A stretch of 60,031 bases of DNA from NCBI GenBank assembly GCA_002104905.1, contig MCFE01000544.1:1-60031 (forward strand). The letters run 5' to 3'. This document shows positions 3,243-46,780 of this stretch, piece by piece (positions within the stretch are counted from its first letter, which is position 1; each line of letters begins with the position of its first letter). Source of the stretch: Basidiobolus meristosporus CBS 931.73 (Eukaryota > Fungi > Basidiobolomycota). Under the pieces are notes generated by a model, which saw nothing but the letters and a program-made list of their open reading frames with translations, ran no database searches and was not told the DNA's origin. Made by a program: the position numbers and the translations under genes.

Positions 3243-4660
3243 ATGCCGCCAAAAAATAAAGCAAAGTCATCTAGTTCTCAACCAAACGCCACTGCTGACA
3301 GCATCAGAAGAAAGGTTGGACAACAGCTTGCTTTGACATTGAGTGCATCAAGCAGGGCTACATCCAAAAAAGGCACTGTGGACAGTATGCCCATTGAAGG
3401 TAATAATGCAGACTCCTCAGGCTCTCAGTCACGTAGGCAATTAAGAACCTCTGCAGAGCCACAAGCTGACTGTTGTGGTGGTGTATAAGTCCAAGGGAGA
3501 GATACGTCCAACACTTCTCAGGTGTTTTGTATGTGGGGTGTTCACTCGGTGCAATAACCTCTGGCAAAAGCTTGCTAGGAATACTTGGGTTCTGTCTCTA
3601 ATATAATGTGAAGGGGAATAAAGCCACAAGCTTGTCAAGGGAAAACTATTGAGCTACAATCCCCAACTTAGTTGGCGTCTTAACAAAAGTATGTGCTGGG
3701 TTCAGTGTCCTTTGAGATGACAATGTACTAATGCTTCCAAAGTCAAAACAACTGTAGACTCCACTAGCAGGGACTTGATAAGAATGCAGCTGTGGTCAAT
3801 AGTTACAAAGACAGAAAAGTATCTTTGCCTGTGCAAGAACAAACTTGGGAAAGAATCAAATATAATAGAAGATACCTACTCTGAGTATTCCTCATAAGTA
3901 GTGCCTCTAAGGTCAATTGGCTGTCAGCGTGGTTTCCTGGGAGTGTCCTGTGGTCTGGGGTTGGAAGCTCAGGTAGCAGCAGGTAGCAGTGATCACACTA
4001 ATCAACAAGTCGGAATATTGATAAAAGGGATGATGATTTATTGTTGAGGGATAGCCTCCCTTATATACTTTTCTCACTGGCTAAGTGATTACTAATCATG
4101 GTGTTCCAGAAGGTTCTGGATATCAATAGAAATCTTAATGATATCAGAATGACCTAAGAATGTTCTAAGTAGGTGCCGGAAGGTTCTAAGAGGCACAGCA
4201 CATCCAACCAATCAAGAATCAGTATTCTGAAACCTGTGTAACATAGGGATACCATATATGGTATGGAAATGGTAGGGATGGTGACACGGGTTGATCATGT
4301 GTTACAGGTACTGGCACAGGTACTTGCCTAATATAGAAGTACTTATAGCTAGTAATCTACATAAAGTGAGGGGTAACTTATGCAATAAGGTAAGCAGGTG
4401 TAATAGTCAACCAGCTTATGGGATAGTACTGATTGGGTAAGACAAATGGGATAAAACTAAAATAAGTGTAGTAGAGATATAGGGAAGTAGAAAATGAGGG
4501 AATGAGAACATATGTCAGTGGGTATCACTGTCACCCCACTACACCATTATGCTCAGGCAGATGAGAATGTAGCAAACACAGTACCTTCAGCTGAAGATCA
4601 GCAAGTGGCCATGACAACATCACCACCACCCATATTAGCAGGTATGTTGTCAGCTTATAA
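3243..4660 (+). pseudogene. N-terminus of CMC ORF2 (MPPKNKAK...), divergent from the transposase, split by solo LTR-A
   Basis: ORF 3243 MPPKNKAKSS...EPQAD resumes after the LTR as YAQADENVANTVP...MTTSPPPILAG. Homologous to 32750-33031/41179+ and to the minus strand of 46300-46774. Confidence 0.7.
3474..4543 (-). mobile_element. Solo LTR, family A (1070 bp), inverted
   Basis: Reverse complement of 500-1570. Flanks CTGT/CCAT are both single CpG-transition derivatives of CCGT. Confidence 0.95.
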
Positions 4661-7543: not shown

Positions 7544-8626
7544 TGTTGTAAAGGTTTGGAATTCCACTTAAATATTCCCCTAACTCAGTCACTTAGATCA
7601 TCATCTTCAGTACCGGAGAATGCTGACCAAATCCCTTGTTGGGATTTACTTGGAATATTTTCAGCAAAATACTAGGTACCCAGAACATGAAAATTTTCAA
7701 AGTTGTCCAAACAGCCTCAGACTTTGCACACATGCTCTTGGGGCCTTTCTTAGCCTATTCTATGCGTTTGTAAAGCCAAGATCATGTAAAAGTATAATTA
7801 CCAGTTTTAAACTCACTAAATCATTAGACTTGTCTGTTGAATAATGCCACATTGAGCTATAAGTGCCAAATGATGCCATTGTGTGCCAGGGAGGCCAGGT
7901 GAGCTTATACTTGGCCACATTGTGCAAAACCTAGCTCTGCATCTTCATGCAAAGCAGCCCCTGCGTTTCACCCATTGTGCTGGAGAAAATCCATTTTTTG
8001 ACCTTTTTTTGCGCATCAATGTTGTTCACAATATGTAAGAGCACAAAAGGATTGAAGATATGCATCTGGCACTCAATACCCATGGCACTCTAAATATAGC
8101 TCCTGTGGCTTGTAAAATGTCACAAAAATGCATGGCACTATCTTGGTCCATTGGCACTATCCGGCACCATATTTAGTCATTAGCCCTAAAGTAAGACCTT
8201 TACAAAGCACTTATAGTGCCAGATAGTACCAGTGGGCCAAGATAGTGCCATGCATTTTTGTGACATGTTACAAGCCACAGGAGCTAGATTTAGAGAGCCA
8301 TGGGTACTCAGTACCAGATGCATATCTTTAATTTTTTTGTGCTCTTAAAAATCCTGAACCACATTGATCCACAAAAAAAAGTAAAGAAATGCATTTTCTT
8401 CTGCATAATGGGTGAAGCACAGGGGCTGCCTTGCATGAAGATGCAGAGCTATGTTCCACACTCTGTGGGCAAGTATAAGCTCTTTTGGCCTCTCTGGCAC
8501 ACTATGGCATCTTTTAGCACTCATGGCTCAATGTGGCACTATCAAATTGAACAAGTCTATTAAGTGAAAACCAAATAGTCTACTGTCCTCACAATCACTT
8601 CCAGTATCCCCAAGGCTCTTACAACT
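7544..8626 (+). repeat. 3' LTR of copia E (~347 bp) interrupted by a foldback MITE
   Basis: Matches LTR-E copies at 33032-33378, 40831-41178 and 48087-48433 once 7826-8558 plus one ATT is removed (AAATC-ATT-AAGTG). Confidence 0.85.
7826..8558. mobile_element. Non-autonomous foldback MITE (733 bp, ~345-bp inverted arms, ~40-bp spacer), TSD ATT
   Basis: Termini AGACTTG...CAAGTCT. The arms are reverse complements along their length, with repeated GGCACTAT/ATAGTGCC motifs. The empty site is seen in other LTR-E copies. Confidence 0.92.
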
Positions 8627-9025
8627 GAAGATACACTCTGATAATTGTGAGCTTTATACCTGAAAACTCTCTATTAAATTGTGCAAAGTTCATAGGATAA
8701 ACCAAGATACTGCTGTAACATATTCCTACAGAAAATGAAGGAGCAGTACCTGCAAAGAGATCAATAATTGATGTGGTACGATCTATAATCATGATCAATA
8801 TTGTCTTATGATTTTTGGGTAGTATCAGTTACTACAGCTGTATCTCAAAGATAGGAGTGTTTGCAGAGTACTTTGCAATTCTACCGCATTTGAGGCATGG
8901 CATGGCTATAGACCAAGTGCAGAGAACCTAAAAATACTTGGGTGATTAGTATATGCCAAGAAACCACCTGGAAATCAGTCAAAATATGATCCAAAAGGTT
9001 AAAATGCTTATTTCCAAGTTACTCC

Positions 9026-12000
9026 TGTTATGATCTGCCGCTTGAATGTTTAAGTTAGATTAGTTTTTAGTCAAATCAATTAGTATATGTTTAGGTTATC
9101 AGTATATCAGTATTATCTATGAAATCAGTAGCATTAGTCAGCAAATGAATCAGCAGATCCTTATCAGACAGAAATAGATATATTAAGTAGGATCTTATTG
9201 GGTGATGCTGATGCAATCAAATGAGTCATCAGCCACAACCTACATTAGGAAATACAATTAGTCAGCAATTGATCTGGCAAAATGTATATAAGGAGCTGCT
9301 GGAACCTCAATAAAAATCAGTTCAAGTTTTAGTGAATACAATACTAGCTAAACTCCCTATTCCTCTACAACTCTTATACCAAGACTTGTAACATTGGTAG
9401 CAGCAAAACCAGAAACCTCCCTCCTGAAGAAAGAAGAAACCACCCTCAAGATGTCGGATAATCAAGAATGGAAGAATGCCATGCAGCAAATCCTGGCCCA
9501 ACAGCAACAGTTACTCCAGATCCTCAGCCAACAGCAACAAGGAATGGCTACCATGGCTCAGAGCCAGCAAAGCCCTGTCAAGAGCAACTTTAGTGTGAAG
9601 GTCAACTGGTACCATGGCAGAGTCAATGAAAACCTGGGAACTTGGCTCTTTCAGATTGAAGAAGCATTTAAAGCTAAAGGAATTGCTCCAGAGAGCAAGT
9701 TGCATTATGCAGCTTCTTACCTGGCAGATGCAGCTTTACAGTGGTACCACAACAAGATCAGGTCAGCTACTATGATGGGATGCTCTACAATCTCTACCTG
9801 GGATGAGTTTGTGTCGGAAATTCAGGATGCTTTTGAACCTCCACACCAGCAGACACTACTAAGAAGAAAGTTAAAGACACTCAGACAGAAAGGAATGGTG
9901 CAAGAATACATCTATGAGTACAGATGTCTACTTGGACAAATTGAAAGAATGGACCCCTTGGATCAAGATGAATACTTTGTTGATGGGTTGAAAGAAAGAA
10001 CTTGCAAGGAAGTCAATTACCAAAGACCTCAGACTATTGAAGAAGCCATCAAGATTGCCATTGACTATGACTCAGCTATGTTTGGAGTTGGGAAGCCTAC
10101 AGTGACTAATCAGAAAGGCTATAATCATTATGAAAGAAGACAATCAGAAGTAGTACCAATGGAAATAGATGCTATGCAGAAGAATCCCTCCTCAGAAGAA
10201 TGCAAGAAGAGAGGACTTTGCTTCAATTGCCACCAGCAGGGACATATTGCAAAGTACTGCCCTAAGAGAAGAAATGAACACCAGCCAACAAGAACCTTCA
10301 ACCATATTGAGTCCCATGAACACAGTAATGTGGAAGATGAGCTTGAAGAATACTTGGAACTCACCTTCCATATGACAGAAGAGTACTTGTCCCATATGAC
10401 TTCAAACTCAGGGAAGTTATTATACTTGAATGGAGTAATCAATGGAGTACCTGCCAAGATCATGATTGACTTGGGAGCATTGCATGAGTACATGTCAGAG
10501 CAATTTGCTTTGAAAGCTGGAATCAACTCGGAACCTACCAAATCAACTTCAGTTTCCACCGCTGATGGGAACTCCCACATAATCAACCGTATTACCCAGC
10601 CAGTAAGAATGAAGATCAATGACTATGAAGAAGACCTACAGGCTTATATATTTGGGAACTGCAAGTTTGACATTGTACTTGGGAAAACCTGGCTATTTTG
10701 TTGTAATCCATCAATCAACTGGAGAACCCATGCTACTCAGATCCAAAAAGACAACAAGACCTATGAGCTATTACCAGCCAGGCTGGATTTCAACTTGGTC
10801 AATTCCAGTGTGTGTGAGACAAGTGAGCTTAGCAAGACCCAGTTCTGTAGAGCACTGAGAAAAGGTATCCAGATGTTCCTCATGGCAGTATTACAGGAGG
10901 ATTCCTCTACCCCAGCACCCCAGCAGGTCCAGACTCTCTTGAAGAAATATTCAGACATGTTTCCAGATGAGCTTGTAAGCCTACCACCAGTCAGAGACGT
11001 GGATCATGCCATTGACACAGGAGATAGCCCTCCAGTGAGCAAGACACCTTACAGAATGAGTCCATTAGAATTGGAGGAAATGAAGAGACAAATTGATCAG
11101 CTATTGGAACAAGGATACATCAGGCCCAGCAAGTCACCCTGGGGAGCACCAGTGCTTTTTGTGAAAAAGAAGGATGGAACACTTAGGATGTGCATTGACT
11201 ACAGAGCCCTGAACTCAGTTACCGTCAAGAATAAGTACCCCATACCTTGGATTGATGAGCTTTTGGACCAACTTAATGGCACCACTATTTTCAGCAAGAT
11301 TGACCTCATGTCAGGATACAACCAGATTAGAGTGAAACCAGAAGATATCCCTAAGACAGCATTCAGGACCAGATATGGACATTATGAGTACTTAGTCATG
11401 AGTTTTGGCCTCACTAATGCCCCTGCAACATTCATGACGCTGATGCAGACTGTCTTTCAGGAGTACTTAGACAAGTTTGTGATAATCTACCTGGATGACA
11501 TATTGATATACAGCAAGACAGAAGAGGATGACATAGTGCACATTGAAAAGGTCTTGAAGAAACTAAGAGAGAACAAGCTATATGGCAAACTAGCCAAGTG
11601 TGAATTCTTCAAGGAACACATAGAATATCTGGGACACATAGTTACTAGCACAGGAGTAACCTTAGACCCCAAGAAGGTGGAAGTAATCAAGAATTTGAAG
11701 CAGCCCCATAGCATATCAGAACTCAGATCCTTCCTTGGAATGGTTTCCTATTATCGGAGATTTGTCAAGTCATTTGCAAGTATTGCAGCCCCTTTAACTG
11801 ATATCCTCAAGAAAGACAATACCTACAAGTGGGACATAGCTTGTGAGACTGCCTTCCAGACGCTAAAGAATGAACTTGCTAAACTGCCAAGCTTAAGAAT
11901 ACCAGACTTCAGAAAAGAGTTCACTCTATGCACAGATGCTTCAGATTATGCAATTGGTGGAGTGCTGAGCCAAGAACACAAGGGAAAGACTACCCTGTTG

Positions 12001-13960
12001 CCTTTGAATCCAAGAAACTGAACTCAGCAGAACAAAACTATCCAGTCCATGAGAAGGAGATGCTTGCTATAGTACACTGTTTGAAGACATGAAGATGCTA
12101 TATTGAAGGAGTCAAATGCACTGTGAAGACTGATCATGCCTCCCTCAAGTATATATTTACTCAGAAGGTACTCTCTAGAAGAATGACAAGATGGAGTGAA
12201 TACATTCAGCAATTTGACCTGGAGATTGTCTACTGTCCTGGAAAAAACAACACAGTTGCTGATGCCTTATCAAGATTAGATCAAGTTGCACAACTCAACT
12301 TGGTGCATGAATCAGATTGGCCTAGCCTATTACCAAAGTACTTGGAGGACCAAGTCATTCATAATGAGGTGGATGAAGATATCAAGAAGATAATCCGTGA
12401 TGAAGCCAGCAAATTTGTTGTACAGAATGAAACACTCTACCAAATTGTTGATGGAAGCCCTATTGCCTATTGTCCTTATGTTGCTTGCCTGGATTTAATA
12501 CATAAGATACACAATGGATATGGACATCTTGGGATTGAAGGAACCTATAGCCTTGTGAAAGCCAGAGCATGGTGGCCCAGAATGAAACAAGACATTGAGA
12601 AGCTAGTAAAAACATGCCCAAACTGCCAAATCAATCAGGGCCAACCACAAAGAATTGCCAAACTCTTCCCTTTGGAGCCTGTAAGACCATTTGAGAGATG
12701 GGGAATTGACTTTATTGGAAGAATGCCAACTACCAGGAAATGCAACTGTTGGATCCTAGTAGCAATTGACCATACCACTAAATGGCCAGTTGCTAAAGCT
12801 GTACCAATAGCCAGTGAACAAGAAGTTCCAAGTTTAATTTACCATGAGATCCTAATGAAGTTTGGATGCCCTGTGGAGATCTTATCCAATAGAGGAGCAA
12901 ATTTTATGGCAAAGACATTAGAGGCTTACCTGGAAATGCAGCAGATCAGACACTTGAAAACCTTGGCATATCACCCCAGAACTAATGGAGTCACTGAGCG
13001 GTTTAATGGTTATTTGGAAAAATGCTGACCAAGTATGCAAATGGAGTTGTCAGTAGATGGGATGAGTATATAGACCAAGCACTCTTTGCATGCAGAGTCA
13101 GAGTACACAACACCACCCAGCAATCACCATTTTACTTAGTTTGTGGATGTGAACCAAGGATTCCAGGAGATCTCACACAACCAAAACTTACAGACACCTC
13201 AGAAGATGAACTCAGTCAGCCAAGTAGACACCAGCAGCTGGAACAAAGACGTCAAGAGGCACAGACCAAAGTATCTCAAAGTGCAGAAAAGATGAAGCAG
13301 AGATTTGATAAGACTATAGCACCAGAAGCATTGACAGTTGGGAACTTTGTATTGCTAAGAAACAACACTTGAAAGAAGTTTGAGCCACAATGGACAGGAC
13401 CATTCAAGATCATCAGAGAATGTCCATTTGCAACTTACCAACTGGTGGACAAACAAGGCAATGTCCGGGAAGACTTAGTGCATAGGGACAGACTCAAGCG
13501 TGCAAGACTTGCTGATAATACTGAACCATCAAGATATTGGTATCACAAGAAAAGAGATTCAGGAGAACCCTCTCAACTTTAGTAGGGGAGAATGTTATGA
13601 TCTGCCGCTTGAATGTTTAAGTTAGATTAGTTTTTAGTCAAATCAATTAGTATATGTTTAGGTTATCAGGATATCAGTATTATCTATGAAATCAGTAGCA
13701 TTAGTCAGCAAATGAATAAGCAGATCCTTATCAGACAGAAATAGATATATTAAGTAGGATCTTATTGGGTGATGATGATGCAATCAAATGAGGCATCAGC
13801 CACAGCCTACATTAGGAAATACAATTAGTCAGCAATTGATCTGGCAAAATGTATATAAGGAGCTGCTGGAACCTCAATAAAAATCAGTTCAAGTTTTAGT
13901 GAATACAATACTAGCTAAACTCCCTATTCCTCTACAACTCTTATACCAAGACTTGTAACA
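9026..13960 (+). mobile_element. Full-length Ty3/gypsy family B, copy 1 (decayed), TSD CTCC
   Basis: 368-bp LTRs at 9026-9393 and 13593-13960 (5 differences counted). PBS-like TGGTAGCAGC at 9395, PPT AGTAGGGGAGAA at 13581-13592, CTCC on both flanks. Confidence 0.97.
9451..13582 (+). pseudogene. gag-pol: gag-pol of family B copy 1
   Basis: Colinear with the intact 1377-aa ORF. Lesions: 1-nt deletions near 11990 and 13015, TGA at ~12090 and at 13370-13372, and protease DSG changed to DLG. Confidence 0.95.
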
Positions 13961-14420
13961 CTCCAATGCAAATAAGGCATACAGACTATACAATACCAAA
14001 GGAAAGAAGCCAATCAAATCTAGGGATGTGTTGTTTGACTAAAACTCAAGATTTTAACTAAAAATGACACCATGTGATGTCAAACATTTAATCTCAAGCA
14101 CACCAACAATTGGAATGGAATCAGAGCAAAACAGTATGATTTTTCATTGCAAAGGATTCTACAACTGCAGTTCAGCCTGAATTAGTGGCCAGGAATATCC
14201 CAGAAGTGATTGTTCAGTGTCACAAGGCAGATGATCAAACCAGATTAGAAAAAGCCCAAATTATTATGTCATTGATGGTAGAAGCTTAGTCTATGGCAAT
14301 TCAGTCCATTTTTGTCAGCCTCCTAATATAAAAGAGGCCCTCAGCCAAAGTTTTGAGATCTGCAATTACCAAGGAGTAGCAGGCCCTGATTGAGAATCAT
14401 ACTTTGGACTTGGTAATATT

Positions 14421-17110: not shown

Positions 17111-17570
17111 CCCTATGGAAATAAATATGATGATCCCAACAAATGGCTGTTGCAAAGCTTAGATCCCATGACCAAGAGGTACTGATGCTGTTAGGACACC
17201 ATACAAAGGCTGTTTAGAAAAAACTGCACTCAGATTCCACAAAAAGCTTGGTCAAAACTTTTCATCACAACAATATTTAAATGGCTGATGATAGGTTCTC
17301 TGCTAGTTCTCTTGCTTACTGATTGTGGACACTCAATTGCCACACATATTTGTATACATTGATTGGTATTGCCTCTTTCTCTCACTCCGTACTTCCTGAC
17401 TCAATCAATGCTTTTACTTTTCATGCATACAAGCTGGTTTTTTTCCTGCCACACTACAGTTGTAACTAAATTGCCAATTGTACTGACCTTTACAAGTCCC
17501 TGTAGCTAGCACTAACATTAAGACCAACCTCACACTCAGCAAGTAGCTCCTTTGGAATCCAATGTTCAAT
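17111..17570 (-). mobile_element. CMC element end (ORF2-side terminus) inserted in copia E gag
   Basis: Begins CCCTATGGAAATAAAT and is reverse-complement homologous to 25070-25520 and 43200-43644. Confidence 0.8.
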
Positions 17571-17743
17571 AGACTTGTTCTGTTGGATAGTGCTGCATAG
17601 TGCCAGCCTGTTTATAGTGCTGGATCAATCTGGCATTATCTGGCACTATAGTTACTACCATAATCCCAGTGGTAGGATATAGTGATTAGTAATATTACTC
17701 AATCTTACTTATGTTGCTCAGAGTAGTACATTCCTTGCTTTAT

Positions 17744-18540
17744 TCACTCTTCGTAATGTTCCAGACACATTTCTCTCAGTGGGTGTCTTCTTGCATGAAT
17801 ATACTATGCATTGATAAGTATCTTAACTACTTTACTTATTTTGCTGTTTTCTCCTATGTATGACCTTCCTCTGTATTTACCTGCCAATATGCTGAATCTC
17901 TTCAGATATCCAAATGTATGCTCTACCCTCACTCTGAAATGATTAAATATCTTGTTGTAGAGCTTCTACTTCCTGCTAAGCACACCATTCCTTGGTATCC
18001 TATAAGCTGTAATACATCCTAAACTCTGACAATCCTCTCCTATATAGGCTAAGTCTGCCATACATTTCTCCCCTCTACTGAATTCTGGATGATTCTCCAC
18101 CCAGTGTGCTTTGTCATGCCTACTTCAAGCAAATGGTCCACTAAACCAGATGATGTAACCCTCAATGTCAGACAATGCCTGAAACTTCACACAGTGTGCC
18201 TTGTACTTGCCAGAATAAAAGTGCCTCAGTCTTCTAGAAGGTCTGCTAATCCTGACTGGGAAGGTATCCCAATACTCCCTACATGGAACCTGTTACTGAA
18301 CACTCTGGGATATGGAGGTCTATTGGAGCTTCTGAACCTAGAACTCCAAGCTTGCTCTAAGTCATCCATACCCTCTGCAAGGTGGTTCTCCATTGCTGTC
18401 AGCTGCAAATGAAAGCTTCTAGGACTTTTGTTGCCATGGATGGTGGGATGAAACCTTTTAGGGCAGTACTTCTTTTAATTGCAGAGAAGCTTAACCAGGG
18501 ATCTTGTTGAGTAGATTGGGGTAGATGAACCACAGAAGAT
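17744..18540 (-). pseudogene. DDE_Tnp_4-type (IS5/ISL2/Harbinger-like) transposase
   Basis: Manual translation: VGSI/DTFPVRISRP...YSGKYKAHCVKFQALSDIEGYIIWFSGPFA*SRHD...MADLAYIG...YNKIFNHFRVRVEHTFGYLKRFSILAGKYR. Catalytic D at 18266-68, D at 18053-55, E at 17921-23. One frameshift just before the first D and several stops. Confidence 0.88.
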
Positions 18541-18989
18541 TGGGCTGAGGTGATTCAAATTGATCTGGTGCAATCAGCTTTATTTACCTGATTTTCCATA
18601 CATTATGATCAAATATCCATCAATTGCCGTGTATCCCATCATTATGTTGCAAAAAGCATCCTCAAACAATAACTGGGTATTTTTATTGATGTTTTACTCA
18701 CCAATCTATATTCAAATAGGAGATCTGCAATTGATGTGATCTGATCCATGTCAATGCAATCCAAGATGCATCATTCACAATATATATGGAAAATTCAGCA
18801 ATCATATTAGTTTTGATATGTATTTCATATAAGACCAGGTTGATGCCAATGCACTACTGTATAAGTATCCAAATCTGCCACTATAGTCCCTATACCAAGT
18901 CTCAACTCATCTTTAGTACAACCCAGATAAAACCTATCCCCCAGCTCATAAGCATGGTCTGGTCTGGAAAAGTCAATGTTGGATCTGTT

Positions 18990-21204
18990 TGAGTTCTTGC
19001 CAAATGATCTCAGTATGGCCCAAGTGTATATGATGAGCCTTCATACAGATATTTGTGCACTGCTCATTAATCTAGCAGAACTAGATACCTTGGAGAGTCA
19101 ACAGAGATGAAACAACCAGAGTAGAAATCTGTGGCATGAGTTCTACATCAAGATTCCAGCAGATGTATGCAAGATGTTATATAACAAGATAAGTATTGAA
19201 ATCAAGAATGAGCTGAGAGTGAGGGGATATGATGAGGAAGCTGTGTGGGAACAATTTTGCATGCAGTTTGCTCAGTACAGGCTGGGCATGTCCATTTGTG
19301 CCTTGACTTTGGGAGCTAAAAATATTCTGAGTGTTTTTTTACCTCAAATGACTAATGTATTATGTGATATATTAGTAGAGCTAAGTGGCTTCCAAGAGCA
19401 ATATACAAAGGACTCATCCAGGCAGCAGTTCCAAAGTATTAGACAGAGGGTAAGTGAATACCTTGAGGAATCAGAAGGTGAGCTCCAAGAGGAGTAATAC
19501 AGACCACAAGCAACATTGTCTATATCATGCCAGCACACCTCACCGGTGTAGTAGGGTGACAGTGACACCCACTGACAGATGTGCTCATTCCCTTATTTTC
19601 TACTTCCCTATATCTCTACTACACTTATTTTAGTTTTATCCCATTTGTCTTACCCAATCAGTACTATCCCATAAACCGGTTGACTATCACACCTGGTTAC
19701 CTTATTGCATAAGTTACCCCTCACTTTATGTAAGAATACTAGCTATAAGTACTTCTATATTAGGCAAGTACCCGCACCAGTACCCGTGACACATGATCAG
19801 CCCGTGTCACCATCCCTACCATTTCCATACCATATATGGTATCCCCATGTTACACAGGTTTCAGAATACTGATTGCTGATTGGTTGGATGTGCTGTGCCT
19901 CTTAGAACCATCAGGCACCTACTTAGAAATTCTTAGGTCATTCTGATGTCATTAAGATTTCTATTGATCTCTGGAACCTTCTGGAACACCATGATTAGTA
20001 ATCACTTAGCCAGTGAGAAAAGTATATAAGGGAGGCTATCCCTCAACAATAAATCATCATCCCTTTTATCAATATACCAACTTGTTGATTAGTGTGATCA
20101 CTGCTACCTGCTGCTACCTGAACTTCCAACCCCAGACCACAGGACACTCCCAGGAAACCACGCTGACAGCCAACTGACCTTGGAGGCACTACTTGTGAGG
20201 AATACTCAGAGTAGGTATCTTTTATTATATTTGATTCTTTCCCAAGTTTGTTCTTGTACAGGCAAAGATACTTTTCTGTCTTTGTAACTATTGACCAAAG
20301 CTGCATTCTTATCAAGTCCCTGCTGGTGGAGTTTACAGTTGTTTTGACTTTGGAAGCTTTAGTACATTGTCATCTCAAAGGACGCTGAACCCAGCACATA
20401 CTTTTATTAAGACGCCAATTAAGTTAGGGATTGTAGCTCAATAGTTTTCCCTTGACAAGCTTGTGGCTTTATTCCCCTTCACATTAGATTACAGACAGAA
20501 CCCAAGTATTCCTAGCAAGCTTTTGCCAGAGGTTATCGCACCCAGTGAACACCCCACACACAAAACACTTGAGAAGTGTTGGACGTATCTCTCCCTTGGA
20601 CTTATACACCACCACACCGGATTCATTATCCTCCCTTGCAACATCAGCATGCTGGCATACATCAGTCCAAACTATGCCAACACTCTTCACAAGAGCACCC
20701 CACATTAAGTCAACACCTATTGGGTCAATGTGTGTGCTTCAGAGCAAAATCACCAGAACTTACCAAACTGCTCAAGAAGACACAAGTCCATTGGAGCAGG
20801 CCAAGTCGCATCAACAAGCAGCATCACATGAAACTCAGCCAAGGACCATGCCAGTGCATCAAGTTGCATCTGCACATGTCATTACACCTAACCATCAGCA
20901 AATTTCTTCTGGTGAACTGACTAATGATGATGCACATGAAGTGCTTCCACCACTAAAGCCTTTGGCAAGTAAAAGAACACATCAGCACATAGCACTGCAG
21001 GCCGGCTCTGTTGCATCATCTGGAGCAATTCAGCGCAGCCAAGTTGCAGCATTGCACACATCTGCTAGGAGGCAAAATATTGACTACAAATATAGCAGTA
21101 GCCAAGAGGATAGTCAACAAGAAAGTAGTTTAGGTGTGCAAAGTGAATTGCTACCAAATGCTTCTGTAGTAATCCCTGTGAGAAAAAAACCTAGGAGAAG
21201 ATAA
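18990..21204 (+). pseudogene. PHIS ORF2, unknown protein ending in RKKPRRR, split by solo LTR-A
   Basis: ORFs 19174-19497 and 20545-21204 are in one frame after removing the LTR and one CCGG (..HTSP/DSLSSL..). The frame extends upstream to LDLFEFLPND with two stops. The start is uncertain. Confidence 0.65.
19547..20616 (+). mobile_element. Solo LTR, family A (1070 bp), TSD CCGG
   Basis: Termini TGTAGT...CACCACA with perfect CCGG on both flanks (19543-46, 20617-20). Confidence 0.96.
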
Positions 21205-21429
21205 TGCAATTGCATTGAATAGCTATTATTTGTAATGGTCCAAACAATGCGTTTTTTTTTGCAATCCGCATTGAGCCATTGCAAAACAGTGATCACTAAA
21301 TTTTTGATATAAGCAATATCAAGGTTGTCTCACATTTGAGACAGGACCCCTATATATGAACACCCTGCATATGTACACATTGTCTGTGGCACCAGTGCAG
21401 CCATTTGGTCTGATTTGCACCTATACAAT

Positions 21430-21811
21430 TGGTTGGGAATCAGTGAATGAACAATGGTATAAAGCCATGGGGTTCTGGCCAAAGTAATGGAAAAAGGTCA
21501 TTTTGGGCAGATGTGCTTATTGAATGGTGAATTGTGAAGGAGTCACTTGTGTAATACCCAATCAATGTACACCAATGAAGGAGGTGATTGAGTGTCCAGG
21601 ATCAGAAACTTAGAGAATTGGCATAGAAACAGTCAAAAGCAGCTTATGAATTGATGTGATAAGATTTTGACAAGTTTTTTGTGAAATCTGAGGCGCATCT
21701 TCTTCTTGACAGTCTTTGCACAGTTTCCTGATAGCATCAATACTTCACAGTCATGGGATCTAATTTCTGTGATGGCCCATTGCTGGGATTGTTGCAATTA
21801 TTTTATAGATT
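21430..21811 (+). mobile_element. CMC fragment: Trp-rich end of ORF2 plus decayed terminus
   Basis: WESVNEQWYKAMGFWPK*W. Aligns with 24980-25520 and ends ATTATTTTTATAGAT. Confidence 0.7.
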
Positions 21812-22040
21812 GTATGCCAAGAAATGGCCTGGAAACCAATCAAATTCTGAACCAGAGAGTGTAAGGAGCATACTTTGTGGACTGCTGCAGTAGGAGTATA
21901 GCAAACTGACTTTGCAGTGCAAGAATATCAAATGGAAGACTGATAATCTGCAGCTACCTCACCAGAAACACACCTTAACTTGGTTAAAACTCAATCAAAT
22001 CAAGAGGGCTTAGTGCTATCTGATAGTACTTAATCCCCTT
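21812..22040 (+). mobile_element. Copia E scraps
   Basis: Two joined pieces similar to 8950-9000 and 6745-6850. Confidence 0.55.
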
Positions 22041-22044
22041 GGAT

Positions 22045-22110
22045 TTTAGCTTGGCTCCCTATTGCTCTACAACTATTATACTAAGATTTGTAACATTGGT
22101 AACACCAGAA
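22045..22110 (+). repeat. Short remnant of an LTR-B 3' end plus PBS
   Basis: CTCCCTATTGCTCTACAACTATTATACTAAGATTTGTAACA-TTGGTA matches the LTR-B end at about 36/41 nt. Confidence 0.7.
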
Positions 22111-23046: not shown

Positions 23047-24085
23047 TGTTGCAATTTAAGAAGTGATTTGGATATAAGGAACTTATCACGAAATAGTAAT
23101 AATATTTGAACTGTTGTTTATTCATAAAGAAGCTCAGTATTTATATTTTTGTAGAAGTAACACAGCCGTAATACTAAGTAAGAAGGTTTCTCAATATTCA
23201 GGAGCATTCTGTAACAGTTTCAGGGTTAGTATATAACGTTAAGTAATAGCGCTAATTTGATCCTGACTATAAGGGAGTAATCATTAGATCATAGATCTGA
23301 GGAAAGTAGCAAAGTTGGAGCTGCAAATTAGTCCCACAGTGACCAAGACTAGTCCAGAATTGTTAAGTAAATTTTTAGCTGCTGAATAATACCAAAGAGT
23401 CCAATATTTTGACACTCCCCCTCAACTAAATAATTTCTTAATCCTAATTCCTCTCTGAGATTCTCAAATTGTGGCCTAGTTAGTGGTTTTGTCAATATAT
23501 TTGCCACCATTTTGTTAGTTGGGCAGTACACCAACTCTACTAAGTTATTTTCTACAGCTTCCCTCACAAAGTGATGCTGTATATCAATGTGCTTAGTTCC
23601 GGCATGATTAGTAGGATTTCTAGCTAATGAAATACAACTTTGATTATTGTTGTAAATACATGTTGGTTCATCCAAATTAAAACCTAAGTTGTTGAATAAT
23701 TTTTGTAGCCATATAACCTCCTTAGTTGCTTGACATGCAGCCATATATTTGGCTTCAGTTGTAGATAGGGCCACAGTTGGTTGTCACTTGCAATTTCAAG
23801 TAATAGCTGCACAGGCATAAAGGAATACATAGCCTGTGGTAGAGCATCTGTCAATCAGATCCCTACCCCAATCTGAATCACTATAACCATCAAATATTTG
23901 CTTATTAGCTGCTCCAGAGTATTCCAGTACCATATTTATGGTACCTTGTAGATATCTGAAAATCCGCTTAACTGCTGCAATTTGATCTGATCCATAATTC
24001 TGCATGAGTTGACTGACTATTCCAACTGCCACTTCAATATCTGGATATGCAGACACCATCATCTACATTAGGCTACCAACCATGC
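23047..24085 (-). mobile_element. 3' part of a copia D element: RT end, RNase H, PPT and 368-bp 3' LTR (23047-23414)
   Basis: ALSTTEAKY...TKHIDIQHHF...ILTKPL. PPT GAGGGGGAG. The LTR is homologous to 35279-35647. Confidence 0.9.
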
Positions 24086-25520
24086 TAAAAACCAGTGGCT
24101 TCCTTAAGAGCCCATTTCAAGCAAGGCCAAAAGCTCTAAACAATTGTCAAAGATGCAGCAGGCAGCTAGAAGAGTACCAATAAGAGAATAGCAGGCAGAT
24201 ACAGATGCATCAGCCCAACATGTACAAAGGAAAAAGCACACTTCTACTTTGGAAGCACACAGTCAAAGTAGCAGTGAAGCACCTATCAGTGATAAAAACA
24301 AGCAGTTACCTTAGGAGCTCATCACAGCATGGGCTGAGGGCTGAAAACATGCATGAAAGAAGCATCAGGTTGCCAGCAGAGTGCCAGCAAGGGACAAGCA
24401 GGCCACATGGATGCTTTGGAGCAGCATTTGTGAAGGAGAAATGTAGCTTAAAACACAAAGCACTCAGTCAAAGTAGCAGTGAGAGAACTTGCAGTGATAA
24501 AGGAAAAGGTAAAGGGGAAAAGTCTACCCAAGTCAGAGACAGGGAAGTGAAAGAGAAAAGCTGCAGTTCTTGCCAATTAATGCTGCAAGCCCAGGTCAGA
24601 CTGAGTCCCATCATGGCCAAGAAGAATTACCAACAAGAAAACAGCTGCTTTCACAAGAGTTGGTAGCACAGCCTGTTGAGCTGCACTACAATGAGGTCAA
24701 TGAGTTTACAGAGGAAGACACCTTGTCTACCTCAGTGTTCATATCCTCCATTGTTGACAGAGTGGGGATCCTACTGACACATAAGTAGCAATGTCAAGAA
24801 CTCAAGAGATTAATACAATGCCTTTGGAGGTGTTTTGAAGCATTAGTAGGCATGCCAAGAGATTGCAGCACTTCTTCAAGAGCAGTATTCAAGAAAATGC
24901 TCTTGGATACTGCAAGGATTTATTGCAAAGACTGGCAGATGTGGTGTTAGACCTTGCAGTGCCAGTTGAAAACCAGCATGCATGGGGACCAGTGAATGAA
25001 CAATGGCATAAAGCTTTAGGGTTCCTACCCAAGCTGTGGAAACAGAGTGTTTCCACAGAAATACTTATTGAGTGGTGGATCTTAATGGAGTTACTTGTTG
25101 TGAGTGAGGTTGGGCTTAATATTAGTATAGGGTATAGGGACTTGTATAGGTCAATACAATTGGTAATTGAGGTAAACTGAAGTTTCAATGGAAATAAATC
25201 AATTCTTATGCATGAAAAAGAAGAGAAATAGCTGAGTCAGGCAGTATGGAGTGTGAAAATGAGGCAATTGCCAATCAATGTACACAAACTTAGGATGTGA
25301 TTGAGTGCCTGGGATTAGAAGTGAGTAAATTGGCAGGGAACCAATCAAAAGCCACTTTTAAATTGTTGTGGTGAAAAATTTTGACCAAGTGTTTTATGAT
25401 ATCTGGGGTGCAATTATTTATTGATGGTTTTTGCATGGCATCCTGATGGAATCAATTCCTCTTAGTCACAAGACTTAGAACTTGTGACAGCCTTTTGATG
25501 TGATCAATGTAGTAATTATT
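24086..25520 (+). pseudogene. C-terminal half of CMC ORF2 (two 207-bp repeats and Trp-rich domain) plus 3' region
   Basis: Aligns with 41750-43620 and encodes FFKSSIQEN...LQRLADVVLDLAV...WGPVNEQWHKALGFLPKLW. Confidence 0.7.
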
Positions 25521-26570: not shown

Positions 26571-26652
26571 TGTGTTTTATTATGATTAGTTTAGGGCTTG
26601 TTCTGCAATGTAGAGGCTAATCAATAATATACAAAAACTTCCAGTATGCCAG

Positions 26653-29600
26653 TGTTACAAGTCTTGGTATAAGAGTTGTAGAGGACTAGGGAGTTTAGCT
26701 AGTATTGTATTCACTAAAACTTGAACTGATTTTTATTGAGGTTCCAGCAGCTCCTTATATACATTTTGCCAGATCAATTGCTGACTAATTGTATTTCCTA
26801 ATGTAGGTTGTGGCTGATGACTCATTTGATTGCATCATCATCACCCAATAAGATCCTACTTAATATATCTATTTCTGTCTGATAAGGATCTGCTGATTCA
26901 TTTGCTAACTAATGCTACTGATTTCATAGATTATACTGATATACTGATAACCTAAACATATACTAATTGATTTGACTAAAAACTGATCTAACTTAAACAT
27001 TCAAGTGGCAGATCATAACATTCTCCCCTACTAAAGTTGAGAGGGTTCTCCTGAATCTCTTTTCTTGTGATACCAATATCTTGATGGTTCAGTATTATCA
27101 GCAAGTCTTGCAAGCTTGAGTCTGTCCCTATGCACTAAGTCTTCCCGGATATTACCTTGCTTGTCCACCAGTTGGTAAGTTGCAAATGGACATTCTCTGA
27201 TGATCTTGAATGGTCCTGTCCATTGTGGCTCAAACTTCTTCCGAGTGTTGTTTCTTAGCAATACAAAGTTCCCAACTGTCAATGCTTCTGGTGCTATAGT
27301 CTTATCAAATCTCTGCTTCATCTTTTCTGCACTTTGAGATACTTTGGTCTGTGCCTCTTGACGTCTTTGTTCCAGCTGCTGGTGTCTACTTGGCTGACTA
27401 AGTTCATCTTCTAAGGCATCTGTAAGCTTGGGTTGTGTGAGATCTCCTGGAATCCTAGGTTCACATCCATAAACTAAGTAAAATGGTGATTGCTGGGTGG
27501 TGTTGTGTACTCTGACTCTGCATGCAAAGAGTGCTTGGTCTATATACTCATCCCATCTACTGACAACTCCATTTGCATACTTAGTCAGCATCTTTCCAAA
27601 TAATCCATTAAACCGCTCAGTGACTCCATTAGTTCTGGGGTGATATGCCAAGGTTTTCAAGTGTCTGATCTGCTGCATTTCCAGGTAAGCCTCTAATGTC
27701 TTTGCCATAAAGTTTGCACCTCTATCGGATAAGATCTCCACAGGGCATCCAAACTTCATCAGGATCTCATGGTAAATGAAACTTGCAACTTCTTGTTCAC
27801 TGGCTATTGGTACGGCTTTAGCAACTGGCCATTTAGTGGCATGGTCAATAGCTACTAGGATCCAACGGTTACATTTCCTGGTAGTTGGCAGTCTACCAAT
27901 AAAGTCAATTCCCCAACTCTCAAATGGTCTGACAGGCTCCAAAGGGAAGAGTTCGGCAATTCTTTGTGGCTGGCCCTGATTGATTTGGCAGTTTGGGCAT
28001 GTTTTCACTAGCTTCTCAATATCTTGTTTCATTCTGGGCCACCATGCTCTGGCTTTCACAAGGCTATAGGTTCCTTCAATCCCAAGATGTCCATATCCAT
28101 TGTGTAGCTTATGTATTAAATCCAGGCGAGCAACATAAGGACAATAGGCAATAGGGCTTCCATCAACAATTCGGTAGAGTGTTTCATCCTGTACAACAAA
28201 TTTGCTGGCTTCATCCCGGATTATCTTCTTGATGTCTTCATCCACCTCATTAGGAATGGCTTGGTCCTCCAAGTACTTTGGTAATAGGCTAGGCCAATCT
28301 GATTCATGTACCAAGTTGAGTTGTGCAACTTGATCTAATCTTGATAAGGCATCAGCAACCGTGTTGTTTTTTCCAGGGCAGTAGACAATCTCCAGGTCAA
28401 ATTGCTGAATGTATTCACTCCATCTTGTCATTCTTCTAGAGAGTACCTTCTGAGTAAATATATACTTGAGGGAGGCATGATCAGTCTTCACAGTGCATTT
28501 GACTCCTTCAATATAGCATCTCCATGTCTTCAAACAGTGTATTATAGCAAGCATCTCCTTCTCATGGACTGGATAGTTTTGTTCTGCTGAGTTCAGTTTC
28601 TTGGATTCAAAGGCAACAGGGTAGTCCTTTCCCTCGTGTTCTTGGCTCAGCACTCCACCAATTGCGTAATCTGAAGCATCTGTGCATAGAGTGAACTCTT
28701 TTCTGAAGTCTGGTATTCTTAAGCTTGGCAACTTAGCAAGTTCATTCTTTAGCGTCTGGAAGGCAGTCTCACAAGCTATGTCCCACTTGTAGGTATTGTC
28801 TTTCTTGAGGATATCAGTTAAAGGGGCTGCAATACTTGCAAATGACTTGACAAATCTCCGATAATAGGAAACCATTCCAAGGAAGGATCTGAGTTCTGAT
28901 ATGCTATGGGGCTGCTTCAAATTCTTGATTACTTCCACCTTCTTGGGGTCTAAGGTTACTCCTGTGCTAGTCACTATGTGTCCCAGATATTCTACGTGTT
29001 CCTTGAAGAATTCACACTTGGCTAGCTTGCCATATAGCTTGTTCTCTCTTAGTTTCTTCAACACCTTTTCAATGTGTACCATGTGATCCTTTTCTGTCTT
29101 GCTGTATATCAATATGTCATCCAGGTAGATTATCACAAACTTGTCTAAGTACTCCTGAAAGACAGTCTGCATCAGCGTCATGAATGTTGCAGGGGCATTA
29201 GTGAGGCCAAAACTCATGACTAAGTACTTGTAATGTCCATATCTGGTCCTGAATGCTGTCTTAGGGATATCTTCTGGTTTCACCCTAATCTGGTTGTATC
29301 CTGACATGAGGTCAATCTTGCTGAAAATAGTGGCTCCATTAAGTTGGTCTAAAAGCTCATCAATCCGAGGTATGGGGTACTTATTCTTGACGGTAACTGA
29401 GTTCAGGGCTCTGTAGTCAATGCACATCCTAAGTGTTCCATCCTTCTTTTTCACAAAAAGCACTGGTGCTCCCCAGGGTGACTTGCTGGGCCTGATGTAT
29501 CCTTGCTCCAATAGCTGATCAATTTGTCTCTTCATTTCCTCCAATTCCAATGGACTCATTCTGTAAGGTGTCTTGCTCACTGGAGGGCTATCTCCAGTGT

Positions 29601-45139: not shown

Positions 45140-46780
45140 AAAGCAGTAGGTCAAGATGCTTGATTCAAGGAGATTTGTGGATCCATCAGGTTACATATTT
45201 GATGACATAAAACAGAGCAAGCACCCTATACCTGAGCATTCACTACCAACAGTCCGATGATGTGCAAGTCATTTGTTGCTTGCATGCAGACTTCTTTCAG
45301 CCACTTGAGTATTGACCCTCTCTTTACTTTTGTATCCATAGGCTTCACAGATTTTCATATCTTGATATATTTTCTGTGAGCAATATGTTACAGTCACTCC
45401 ATCCCCAGATGTGATATACTTTTCAGTGGCTGGTATCTATAAGTATTGTGCTTAGGATTGAGAGACTCCAATGTTTGCTCTAGTATAACATTGGGGAATA
45501 GCTTAAGTCTGGTATAAGCTGTTGAGCTACTGGGAGGCCTATACTGCTGCAAAGCTAATAGACCTGTTCCATTAGATAGTGCCATATCAAGCTTTGAGTG
45601 CCAATTGATACCATAGTGTGCCAGGGAGGCCAAGTGACCCTATACTTGCCCACAGAGTGCAAAATATAGTCCTTCATCTTCATGCAAAGCAGCCCCTGTG
45701 TTTCACCTATTGTGCTGGAGAAAATCCAATTCTTAACCTACTTTTTGGGATCAGTAATGTGCAGGATGTGTAAGAAAAGATAAGGACCAAAGATATCTAT
45801 CTGGTACTCAATACCTATTGCACTCTAAATCTAGTTCCTGCAGCTTGTCACATGTCATAAAAAGGTATAGCACCATCTTGGTCCACTGGTACTATCTGTC
45901 ACTATATTTAAACAATAGCCCTAAAGTAAAACCTATACAAAGCACTTGTAGTGCCAGATAGTACCGGTGGACCAAGATAATGCTATACCTTTTTGTGATA
46001 GGTTACAAGCTGCAGGAGCTAGATTTAGAGTGCCATAGGTATTGGGTATCAGATAGACATCTTCAGTCCTTCTGTGCTCTTACACATCCTGCACATCATT
46101 GATCCCCAAAAAAAGGTCAAAAAATGGATTTTCTCCAGCACAATGAGTGAAGCATGGGGGCTGCCTTGCTTGAAGATGAAGAACTATGTTTCACACTCTG
46201 CGGCCAAATTTAGATCCACTATTCCTCTATGGCACACAATAGCATTATTTGGCACTCATGGCTCAGTGTAGCACTATCCAACAAAACAAGTCTAATGTAT
46301 TCTCCACCTGGGATATTTGATTACCCTACATGCATCATTCATTTATCCAGCCTCTAAACTGTGCTCTTATTACTTGAAGCCACTTTATAAATCCTCTTGG
46401 CTACTTAGCTTGTTTAGCTCTATAATTCTGCAGTATAAGCTGACAATCAATCTGCATATACTGGCAGTGGTGTTGTACTAATGGTCATTTGCTGGTCTTC
46501 TACCAGAGGGACTGCAATTGCAACATTGTTGTATGGCTTTGCAGTATGCTCAGCTTATAGCTCTACAGATACTTTCAACTGCCTACTTGACTGAGAACCT
46601 GAATTGGATAGGGTGGTGGCAGATTGCCACTATTATCAGTAAGCAGGGTTTTGAAACTCACTGCTAATTCTTGTCATATTGCTCTGTGATGCAGCTTTCT
46701 ATGAACCTGGTGCAAGGGGAAAACTGCTGTGTAGCTGGCTCCATCTGACCCAGAGAGCTTACTGATGCCAGCATATGTTG
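45140..46780 (-). pseudogene. Third CMC ORF2 copy (N-terminal half), split by a MITE
   Basis: The reverse complement of 46400-46620 aligns with 3415-3470 joined to 4550-4660. 45330-45370 encodes MKICEAY, homologous to WKICEAI at 41410. Confidence 0.65.
45560..46293. mobile_element. Foldback MITE copy 2 (734 bp), TSD AAT
   Basis: Termini AGACCTG...CAAGTCT, AAT on both flanks, colinear with 7826-8558. Confidence 0.92.

What the first reader, a model, noticed from the sequence alone, without database searches (positions are those of the whole stretch)
17571..21300. Hidden autonomous PHIS-type transposon that is the likely mobiliser of the foldback MITEs
Seen: an AAT|AGACTTGTTCTGTTGGATAGTGCT terminus matches the MITE ends over ~27 nt and is followed by the same TGGCA(C/T)TATCTGGCACTAT motif found in the MITE arms. 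About 170 bp inward ends a minus-strand DDE transposase that the ORF track misses (DTFPVRISRP, YSGKYK-H, ADLAY, RVRVEHTFG). Established: these motifs fit DDE_Tnp_4 enzymes of the IS5/ISL2/Harbinger group. Inference: this is an autonomous-plus-MITE family with an AWT target, unlike the TWA of classical Harbingers or the AT of ISL2EU. I recall ANT duplications being reported for the Pangu group; this needs verification. It may be an undescribed fungal family.
Basis: partly seen in the sequence, partly recalled or inferred. Interest (0 to 1): 0.75.

Follow-up and report, generated by a model that had tools for sequence, protein, structure and literature searches.

The report
Dead Pangu-type transposon copy beside MITEs
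This is a broken, one-ended copy of a two-gene cut-and-paste transposon of the already described Pangu (Harbinger2) group, whose end sequence and 3-bp A-T-T target match the two hairpin mini-transposons in the same window; it is real but ordinary, and this copy can no longer move anything.

Summary
AAT|AGACTTGTTCTGTTGGATAGTGCT at 17571 is a true insertion boundary, shown by an uninterrupted paralogous site. It matches the ends of two 733/734-bp foldback MITEs (23/24 nt to one end). A minus-strand DDE_Tnp_4 transposase gene ends 176 bp inward.

This copy is not autonomous:
- The transposase (17747-18630) has four in-frame stops and one frameshift.
- A divergent second reading frame (18952-21204) has two stops and a solo LTR inside it.
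- No right terminus exists; the element breaks off before about 21384-21434.

The AWT target is not new. It defines the Pangu group of Han et al. 2015 (ANT duplication, AG-starting ends, a DDE-only transposase plus a partner gene with no known domain; Harbinger2 in Repbase). That group is already catalogued in fungi, with AWT noted for Melampsora, Tuber and Talaromyces.

Distant relatives of the transposase, fetched with flanks, also end in AGACTTG...CAAGTCT next to A-N-T. They include bacterial IS5-family elements with ATT/ATT duplications. This ties the enzyme clade to this terminus.

The MITE link is plausible at family level only. Earlier reports of this scan describe the same family many times on other DNA of this genome.

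Verdict: new member of a known kind, low interest.

The parts
17118..17567 (-). Left flank: fragment of an older dispersed repeat ('X'; other copies at 24080-25506 and 41669-43636) into which the element inserted
   Evidence: BLAST at 71-72% identity to 25076-25506 and 43204-43636. The alignment shows the repeat cut exactly at its ATT.
17568..17570 (+). Target trinucleotide AAT (ATT in the orientation of repeat X) next to the terminus. It is one copy of the presumed 3-bp duplication.
   Evidence: Three uninterrupted X copies read CTT-ATT-GA at this point.
17571..17609 (+). Left terminal inverted repeat, AGACTTGTTCTGTTGGATAGTGCT... It matches the MITE ends.
   Evidence: The terminal heptamer AGACTTG is conserved at the ends of elements that encode related transposases.
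17631..17649 (+). Subterminal motif TGGCATTATCTGGCACTAT. It holds inverted copies of the ATAGTGCC box of the terminus and is shared with the inner ends of the MITE arms. It is a possible protein-binding site (inference).
   Evidence: 4 matches, 0 expected; read directly.
17747..18630 (-). Transposase pseudogene (DDE_Tnp_4 only, about 294 codons). It has four in-frame stops and one frameshift near 18270. The catalytic D (WDTFPV), D (SRHD) and E (RVEHTFG) motifs can still be recognised.
   Evidence: The aligned part is 17750-18537; the N-terminal 31 codons are inferred from length only.
18825..18902 (-). Internal, inverted terminus-like sequence (...GCCACTATAGTCCCTATACCAAGTCT|caa on the + strand) in the gap between the two genes. 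Its meaning is unsettled.
   Evidence: heptamer plus CACTAT box; weak similarity to the left end over 120 nt aligned, visible mainly in the first ~75 nt; 10 of 500 shuffles reach the score.
18952..19546 (+). Partner reading frame (ORF2), first part. It runs away from the transposase gene and has in-frame stops at 19108-19110 and 19495-19497.
   Evidence: Once the LTR is removed, one frame stays open for 392 codons with only 2 stops, where I estimate about 25 from base composition (my arithmetic). No Pfam domain.
19547..20616 (+). Solo LTR (TG...CA) inserted into ORF2, flanked by CCGG/CCGG (19543-19546 and 20617-20620). It is not part of the transposon.
   Evidence: 94-97% identical to 493-1578, 54680-55755 and 3474-4545. 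Ends and flanks read.
20621..21204 (+). Partner reading frame (ORF2), second part. It is rich in S, Q and T and ends in KKPRRR.
21205..21433 (+). Unassigned tail. The element breaks off here without a terminus, and another, uninterrupted copy of repeat X (plus orientation) starts at about 21384-21434.
7826..8558 (+). Foldback MITE 1 (733 bp; 331-nt arms, 85% complementary) with ATT/ATT duplication
   Evidence: Three paralogous empty sites show the 3-bp duplication.
45560..46293 (+). Foldback MITE 2 (734 bp; 346-nt arms, 81% complementary) with AAT/AAT duplication. Its right end is the closest match to the terminus at 17571 (23/24).

Best explanation
The stretch from 17571 to about 21400 is the decayed remnant of one copy of a two-gene cut-and-paste DNA transposon. 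The element belongs to the Pangu (Repbase: Harbinger2) group of the PIF/Harbinger-ISL2EU-Spy (PHIS) superfamily.

How the family most likely works:
- A short DDE-only transposase, perhaps with the partner protein, recognises AGACTTG... ends that carry ATAGTGCC boxes. It excises the element and reinserts it at A-N-T (here A-W-T) sites, duplicating 3 bp.
- The 733/734-bp foldback MITEs carry the same ends and the same duplication. They are non-coding riders that such an enzyme could move in trans.

Shown here:
- The left end is a genuine insertion boundary at an ATT.
- The transposase gene lies 176 bp inside that end and reads towards it.
- The MITEs make 3-bp ATT or AAT duplications.
- Relatives of this enzyme are bounded by the same heptamer and by A-N-T.

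Inferred:
- ORF2 belongs to the element.
- The boxes are binding sites.
- Enzymes of this family moved these MITEs.

This copy is dead. Its transposase has 4 stops and 1 frameshift. ORF2 has 2 stops and a solo LTR inside it. The right end was lost in a rearrangement.
For: Terminus and motif are non-random and shared with the MITEs.

One-sided empty site: three intact copies of the flanking repeat read CTT-ATT-GA where the flank is cut by AAT|AGACTTG.

MITE1's ATT duplication is proven by three paralogous empty sites. MITE2 is flanked by AAT/AAT.

Transposase: Pfam DDE_Tnp_4 on two pieces. Its best relative among 1.84 billion representatives is P0001 (294 aa, DDE_Tnp_4 only). tblastn covers residues 32-294 at 62% and 43% identity. 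The family alignment keeps the D, D and E motifs.

Relatives fetched with flanks are bounded as follows:
- L004: ATT|AGACTTGG...CCAAGTCT|AAT, 3640 bp
- L011: ATT|AGACTTGG...CCAAGTCT|GTT, 3358 bp, with opposite-strand ORFs upstream of the transposase
- L003: |ATT
- L020: |AGT
- L021: |AAT, with the end AGACTTGTTCCCG
- Bacterial IS elements L005, L006 and L007: ATT/ATT

ORF2: one frame of 392 codons with 2 stops after removal of the solo LTR, divergent from the transposase gene.

Literature: Pangu has an ANT duplication, 11-40-bp TIRs starting AG or GG, two ORFs with a DDE-only transposase and a partner without known motif, and an average length of about 3.5 kb. It occurs in ascomycetes and basidiomycetes, several with AWT. 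Harbinger2 = Pangu.
Against: - No second terminus was found, so the 3-bp duplication of this copy cannot be checked and its full length is unknown.
- ORF2 has no detectable relative anywhere: Pfam, atlas, word search and tblastn against 26 related loci. Its membership rests on position, frame length and analogy.
- An inverted terminus-like sequence at 18825-18902 would bound a 1332-bp one-gene unit that excludes ORF2.
- Similarity to the MITEs is confined to about 39 nt at the tip plus a 19-45-nt subterminal block. The arms do not derive from the part of the element preserved here.
- Placement in a tree with Pangu, Harbinger, ISL2EU, Spy and Nuwa references was not done.
Confidence: 0.8

Rival explanations
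1. The real element is a compact, IS-like, one-gene transposon of 1332 bp (17571-18902), bounded by imperfect inverted repeats. The reading frame to its right (18952-21204) is unrelated neighbouring DNA.
For: - ...ACCAAGTCT at 18894-18902 is the reverse complement of the terminal heptamer. A CACTAT box lies 11 nt inside it; the MITE ends have it 9 nt inside.
- The two ends align weakly when 120 nt are aligned, the visible matches lying mainly in the first ~75 nt: score 12 against 5.0 +/- 2.4 in shuffles, reached by 10 of 500.
- Its first 11 nt equal the L004 terminus AGACTTGGTAT.
- Bacterial relatives are one-gene elements of about 1 kb.
Against: - The flanks do not match (AAT against CAA).
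- The DNA right of 18902 is not the continuation of the interrupted flanking repeat, as a simple insertion would require.
- A 392-codon frame starts 50 bp beyond it and shows a similar degree of decay.
- Eukaryotic relatives L004 and L011 are 3.4-3.6 kb, with about 2 kb upstream of the transposase inside their ends.
- Pangu elements normally have two ORFs.
- Other reports of this scan describe 3.4-kb two-gene copies in this genome (a lead, not tested here).
Confidence: 0.14
2. The AGACTTG end at 17571 belongs to a separately inserted, internally deleted MITE fragment. It lies next to an unrelated, truncated transposase relic by chance.
For: - The first ~80 nt (17571-17652) look like the outer ~39 nt of a MITE arm joined to the 19-nt inner-arm motif.
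- By eye, similarity may continue for about 25 nt into the MITE loop; this was not tested statistically.
- The region is a dense mosaic of nested repeats.
Against: - The orientation and the distance to the stop codon (176 bp) are in the range seen in relatives, whose transposase frames end roughly 40-580 bp inside a CAAGTCT end (read).
- The terminal heptamer is conserved at the ends of elements that encode this enzyme clade, from bacteria to eukaryotes. An AGACTTG end is therefore what this transposase gene is expected to carry.
- About 270 nt of arm sequence is absent.
Confidence: 0.05
3. This copy is itself a working autonomous element that currently mobilises the MITEs, which is the literal sense of the finding's title.
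For: None beyond the shared terminus.
Against: - The transposase has four in-frame stops and a frameshift.
- ORF2 is interrupted by two stops and a 1070-bp solo LTR.
- There is no right end.
- The MITE copies differ from each other by about 20%, so they are old.
Confidence: 0.01

Closest known systems
Pangu group of the PHIS superfamily (Han et al. 2015, PMC4482050); called Harbinger2 in Repbase (Kojima 2025, PMC12730594)
   Same: - 3-bp A-N-T (here A-W-T) target duplication.
- Terminal inverted repeats within 11-40 bp that start with AG.
- A short transposase with a DDE_Tnp_4 domain and nothing else.
- A second ORF without a known domain.
- Affinity to bacterial IS5.
- Presence in fungi, with MITE derivatives (for example Pangu_PStr, 199 bp).
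   Different: - The host is apparently an early-diverging fungus (Basidiobolus, according to other reports of this scan), which is not among the 15 species that Han et al. list as carrying Pangu.
- The non-autonomous partners here are about 730-bp foldbacks with 330-346-nt arms.
- This copy is broken and one-ended.
- Clustering with Pangu reference proteins was not tested.
Canonical PIF/Harbinger elements (for example Ping/Pong with mPing; Tourist MITEs)
   Same: DDE_Tnp_4 transposase plus a second ORF, a 3-bp duplication, and MITEs that share only the termini with the autonomous partner.
   Different: - The target is A-W-T, not T-W-A.
- No Myb/SANT domain is detectable in the partner frame.
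- The transposase is shorter (about 294 aa). No extra N-terminal domain was detected in its relatives.
Bacterial IS5-family insertion sequences (NCBIfam transpos_IS5_4 type), as found here in L005, L006, L007 and L015
   Same: - Homologous transposase: 30-33% identity to P0001, and IS5_4 HMM hits of E 1e-15 for the eukaryotic proteins.
- Ends AGACTTGT.../AAACTTGT...
- ATT/ATT duplications.
   Different: They are about 1 kb with a single gene and sit on bacterial contigs. The element here is eukaryotic and larger, with a second reading frame.
ISL2EU and Spy groups of PHIS
   Same: The same transposase superfamily.
   Different: ISL2EU makes a 2-bp AT duplication, and its transposase carries THAP with a YqaJ partner. 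Spy makes no duplication. Neither fits the 3-bp ATT/AAT shown by the empty sites here.

Membership tests
PHIS superfamily (PIF/Harbinger-ISL2EU-Spy) | Transposase with a DDE_Tnp_4-type catalytic domain that can be aligned over the whole catalytic region | tested here: met
   Pfam DDE_Tnp_4 on pieces of the relic and on its relatives (E 1e-19 to 1e-23). tblastn covers residues 32-294 of P0001. The D, D and E motifs are aligned.
Pangu / Harbinger2 group | 3-bp target-site duplication 5'-ANT-3' (the group-defining criterion of Han et al.) | tested here: met
   - MITE1: ATT/ATT, confirmed by three paralogous empty sites.
- MITE2: AAT/AAT.
- Relic left end: at the ATT of an otherwise uninterrupted repeat.
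- For the relic itself only one side can be seen.
Pangu / Harbinger2 group | Terminal inverted repeats of 11-40 bp, usually starting AG or GG | tested here: met
   The ends start AGACTTG. The shared terminal block is about 24-39 nt.
Pangu / Harbinger2 group | Two ORFs: a DDE-only transposase and a partner protein without known motifs | tested here: inconclusive
   A DDE-only transposase is shown. A 392-codon divergent frame without a Pfam domain is present. Its membership in the element is not proven, because there is no right end and no homologue.
Pangu / Harbinger2 group | Transposase clusters with Pangu/Harbinger2 references, next to IS5, in a phylogeny | not testable with these tools
   No Repbase reference sequences could be obtained as tool output. 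Indirect support only: IS5_4 HMM hits, and bacterial IS5-family relatives with the same ends and target.
Canonical PIF/Harbinger group | TWA (TTA/TAA) 3-bp duplication and a Myb/SANT partner protein | tested here: not met
   The duplications are ATT and AAT. No Myb/SANT hit in ORF2.
ISL2EU group | 2-bp AT duplication; THAP domain in the transposase; YqaJ partner | tested here: not met
   The empty sites show 3 bp duplicated. No THAP or YqaJ hits.
Autonomous (functional) element | Intact transposase ORF and two matching termini | tested here: not met
   4 stops and 1 frameshift. No second terminus.

The most novel reading that the evidence does not exclude
The transposase unit 17571-18902, bounded by inverted AGACTTG termini, is a self-sufficient IS-like core. 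On this reading the Pangu two-gene elements of eukaryotes are built around a bacterial IS5-type module whose enzyme, terminal heptamer and ATT target have all been conserved from bacteria to fungi. That would be a sequence-level trace, at the DNA ends as well as in the protein, of a prokaryote-to-eukaryote transposon lineage.
Probability: 0.15. Interest if true: 0.45.

Novelty: new member of a known kind. Interest (0 to 1): 0.2.

Why it matters
It adds little beyond annotation. It places one more decayed copy of an abundant Pangu/Harbinger2-type family in a repeat-rich fungal genome. It also shows, with paralogous empty sites, that the family and its foldback MITEs use A-W-T targets.

The only point of wider interest concerns the element ends. 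Elements encoding this transposase clade share the terminal heptamer AGACTTG (AAACTTG in two of them), and most share the ATT target. This holds from bacterial IS5-family elements to eukaryotic two-gene elements. It supports the proposal of Han et al. that Pangu and IS5 are one lineage. It also gives a practical handle, terminus plus target, for finding such elements where gene callers miss the broken transposase.

Tried and rejected
- Second terminus. I looked for it by pattern with 3 mismatches, local alignment of the left 90 nt in both orientations, and a heptamer scan with 1 mismatch over 21150-22100. None was found.
- Tail against MITE arms. With lenient gap costs the tail 21150-21480 seemed to resemble the MITE arms. 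With stricter scoring this vanished into the shuffle range, so I rejected it.
- ORF2 relatives. Pfam, tblastn against the 26 related loci and against the window, the ESM Atlas and the word-index protein search were all blank. The word search sees only proteins of 70-224 aa for this 128-aa piece, so that blank is weak.
- Word search with P0001 found only 2 further proteins.
No intact same-genome copy could be examined.
- Tree. A tree with Harbinger, ISL2EU, Spy, Pangu and Nuwa references was not built, because no reference sequences were available as tool output and I did not type any.
- Broken genes. Both were searched piece by piece, by reference. The two halves of ORF2 were joined across the solo LTR only inside a script, to read the frame. 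The joined sequence was not sent to any search.
- The ATAGTGC pair at 22935/22964 is a chance match.
- The left boundary of the right-hand X repeat copy could not be pushed beyond about 21384.
Full report
**Setting.** The window is TE-dense eukaryotic DNA with 40% G+C. CpG is almost erased (observed/expected 0.09) while CAG/CTG are not depleted. It holds Ty3/gypsy and copia elements, Tnp2/CACTA fragments and a DUF4100 ORF. Other reports of this scan name the genome as the fungus Basidiobolus meristosporus. I did not verify that.

**The observation.**
- The 24-mer AGACTTGTTCTGTTGGATAGTGCT lies at 17571-17594. Within three mismatches it has one other match, at 46270-46293 on the minus strand, with none expected by chance.
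- That second site is the right end of a foldback element, 45560-46293. A second foldback lies at 7826-8558. Their arms are 346 and 331 nt long and 81-85% complementary.
- Alignment of the 17571 end with the four foldback ends shows a shared start of about 25-39 nt. After that the similarity stops.
- The motif TGGCAYTATCTGGCACTAT occurs 60 nt inside the 17571 end and at the inner ends of the foldback arms.
Two stop-free pieces hit Pfam DDE_Tnp_4.

**The transposase.**
- A 55-aa piece was searched against 1.84 billion representatives. It found 36 proteins. The best is P0001 (294 aa, 71% identical over the piece).
- The five relatives scanned, P0001 among them, carry a DDE_Tnp_4 domain; four have nothing else and one (P0014) adds a chromodomain. 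They also give sub-threshold hits to an IS5-family model.
- tblastn of P0001 against the window aligns residues 32-294 to 18537-17750 in two frames. Identity is 62% in the catalytic part and 43% before it. There are four in-frame stops and one frameshift near 18270.
- The D (WDTFPV), D (SRHD) and E (RVEHTFG) positions align with the family.
- The gene is therefore full-length but dead. It ends 176 bp from the terminus and reads towards it. It is the only such relic in the window.

**Is 17571 a real transposon end?** Yes.
- The left flank 17118-17567 is a fragment of an older repeat, here called X, that has other copies at 24080-25506 and 41669-43636.
- Three copies of X read CTT-ATT-GA without interruption exactly where the flank is cut by AAT|AGACTTG. 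One of them lies just to the right of the relic. This is a one-sided paralogous empty site, and the target is ATT.
- For foldback 1 the flanks have three paralogues in the window, around 33312, 41112 and 16798. In these the left and right flanks overlap by three bases (ATT, ATC, ATC), which shows a 3-bp duplication of ATT.
- Foldback 2 is flanked by AAT/AAT.

**Does this enzyme go with this end?** I fetched 26 metagenomic loci that encode relatives of the transposase. Many of them are bounded by the same heptamer next to A-N-T:

| Locus | Ends and flanks | Note |
|---|---|---|
| L004 | ATT\|AGACTTGG...CCAAGTCT\|AAT | 3640 bp |
| L011 | ATT\|AGACTTGG...CCAAGTCT\|GTT | 3358 bp |
| L003 | ...CAAGTCT\|ATT | right end only |
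| L019/L020 | ...GGGAACAAGTCT\|AGT | right end only |
| L021 | ...GGGAACAAGTCT\|AAT | right end only |
| L005 | ATT\|AGACTTGTAGCG...CAAATCT\|ATT | bacterial IS, about 1 kb |
| L006, L007 | ATT\|AAACTTGTCGCG...CAGGTCT\|ATT | IS of about 1 kb, two different sites |
| L008, L013, L015 | heptamer end present | flanks do not fit A-N-T |

- L005 and L015 are bacterial contigs; their neighbours include MltG and radical-SAM genes. L006 and L007 carry the same kind of ~1-kb IS, but their contigs were not checked.
- Per locus, the heptamer is expected 0.1-0.8 times per strand by chance.
- An AGACTTG end flanked by A-N-T is therefore a property of elements that encode this enzyme clade. This argues against a chance adjacency at 17571.

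**The rest of the span.**
- 19547-20616 is a solo LTR (TG...CA). It is 94-97% identical to three other copies and is flanked by CCGG/CCGG.
- Removing it, inside a script only, restores a single plus-strand frame from 18952 to 21201. The frame has 392 codons and two stops, where I estimate about 25 from base composition (my arithmetic).
- This frame diverges from the transposase gene, as do the opposite-strand ORFs upstream of the transposase in L004 and L011.
- It has no Pfam domain and no detectable relative. That matches the description of the Pangu partner ORF, but it leaves its membership in the element as an inference.
- To the right of its stop codon no terminus exists. An apparent similarity to the foldback arms did not survive stricter scoring.
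- At about 21384-21434 another, uninterrupted X copy begins in the opposite orientation. The right end of the element and the rest of the interrupted X copy have therefore been lost in a rearrangement.

**An unresolved detail.**
- At 18825-18902, between the two genes, lies ...GCCACTATAGTCCCTATACCAAGTCT|caa. It is an inverted copy of the terminal heptamer together with a CACTAT box.
- It aligns weakly with the left end when 120 nt of each are aligned (the visible matches lie mainly in the first ~75 nt); 10 of 500 shuffles reach the score.
- Together with 17571 it would bound a 1332-bp one-gene unit. I rate that rival at 0.14, for four reasons:
  - The flanks differ (AAT against CAA).
  - The DNA beyond 18902 is not the continuation of repeat X.
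  - A long frame starts 50 bp beyond it.
  - Eukaryotic relatives are two-gene sized.

**Comparison with what is known.**
- Han et al. 2015 defined the Pangu group of PHIS by four features: the 5'-ANT-3' duplication, 11-40-bp TIRs that usually start AG or GG, two ORFs (a DDE-only transposase and a partner without motifs), and closeness to IS5.
- Their Table S3 lists fungal families. Melampsora, Talaromyces and Tuber are noted as AWT. A 199-bp Puccinia MITE family is noted as ANT.
- Kojima 2025 equates Pangu with Repbase Harbinger2.
- Muszewska et al. 2017 report large PIF/Harbinger expansions in Basidiobolus.
- Every defining feature that I could test is met. Only the phylogenetic placement could not be tested.
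- The element is therefore a new member, at most a new family, of a known kind.
- The scan itself holds 92 notes that mention Pangu for this genome. They include follow-ups that describe intact 3.4-kb two-gene copies with AGACTTGTTCC ends. I treat these as leads that agree with my reading, not as evidence.

**The mobiliser claim.** The shared tip (23/24 nt with one MITE end), the shared subterminal box and the identical target make it reasonable that enzymes of this family moved the foldbacks. The copy in this window cannot have done so in its present state. The foldback arms do not derive from the part of the element that survives here. They may derive from the missing ORF2-proximal end, which could not be tested.

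**Limits.**
- No reference tree was built.
- The broken genes were searched piece by piece, by reference.

Noticed in passing
window 26649-31519 and 9020-13962: A young Ty3/gypsy element has 100% identical 300-nt LTR starts (26649 and 31220) and an intact 1377-aa gag-pol ORF (27031-31164, minus strand). A second, inverted copy is 96-98% identical, and its ORF is split into 875 and 301 aa.
   Followed up: partly
L005:4-1046, L006:~16-1043, L007:~898-1925, L015:4131-5147: IS5-family insertion sequences of about 1 kb, related to the fungal transposase, end in AGACTTGTAGCG or AAACTTGTCGCG. Three of the four are flanked by ATT/ATT. L005 and L015 lie on bacterial contigs; the L006 and L007 contigs were not checked. 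These ISs share the terminal heptamer or a near-copy of it, and the target, with the eukaryotic Pangu-type elements.
   Followed up: partly
window 17750-18537 (minus): All 26 arginine codons of the transposase relic are AGA or AGG, and CpG observed/expected is 0.05. This agrees with earlier notes of this scan on a CpG-free transposase lineage in this family.
   Followed up: partly
P0014, P0043, P0004, P0020; L011:3307-3732: Some relatives of the transposase carry a C-terminal extension. P0014 has a chromodomain (Pfam E 9e-11). Four others share a V.V....WW.G.V block that looks Tudor/Agenet-like. This may target insertion to chromatin marks.
   Followed up: no
window 18825-18902; L011:2018; L020:1188; L021:307: Terminus-like CCAAGTCT sequences lie about 260-370 bp upstream of the transposase gene in several family members. 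In the window the orientation is inverted relative to the gene-proximal end; in the three loci it is direct. Possible readings are an internal binding site, a promoter element or a vestigial end.
   Followed up: partly
window 17118-17567 and 21384-21790: Two old copies of the same dispersed repeat (X, part of a unit of at least 1.4 kb also at 24080-25506 and 41669-43636) flank the relic in inverted orientation. Only the left one is interrupted at the insertion site, which points to a later deletion or rearrangement on the right.
   Followed up: partly
window 1443-1955 (minus) and 55675-57444: A Tnp2/CACTA transposase fragment (Pfam Transposase_21, E 2.5e-6) and a 589-aa ORF with a marginal DUF4100 hit lie next to copies of the same LTR that sits inside the relic.
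   Followed up: no
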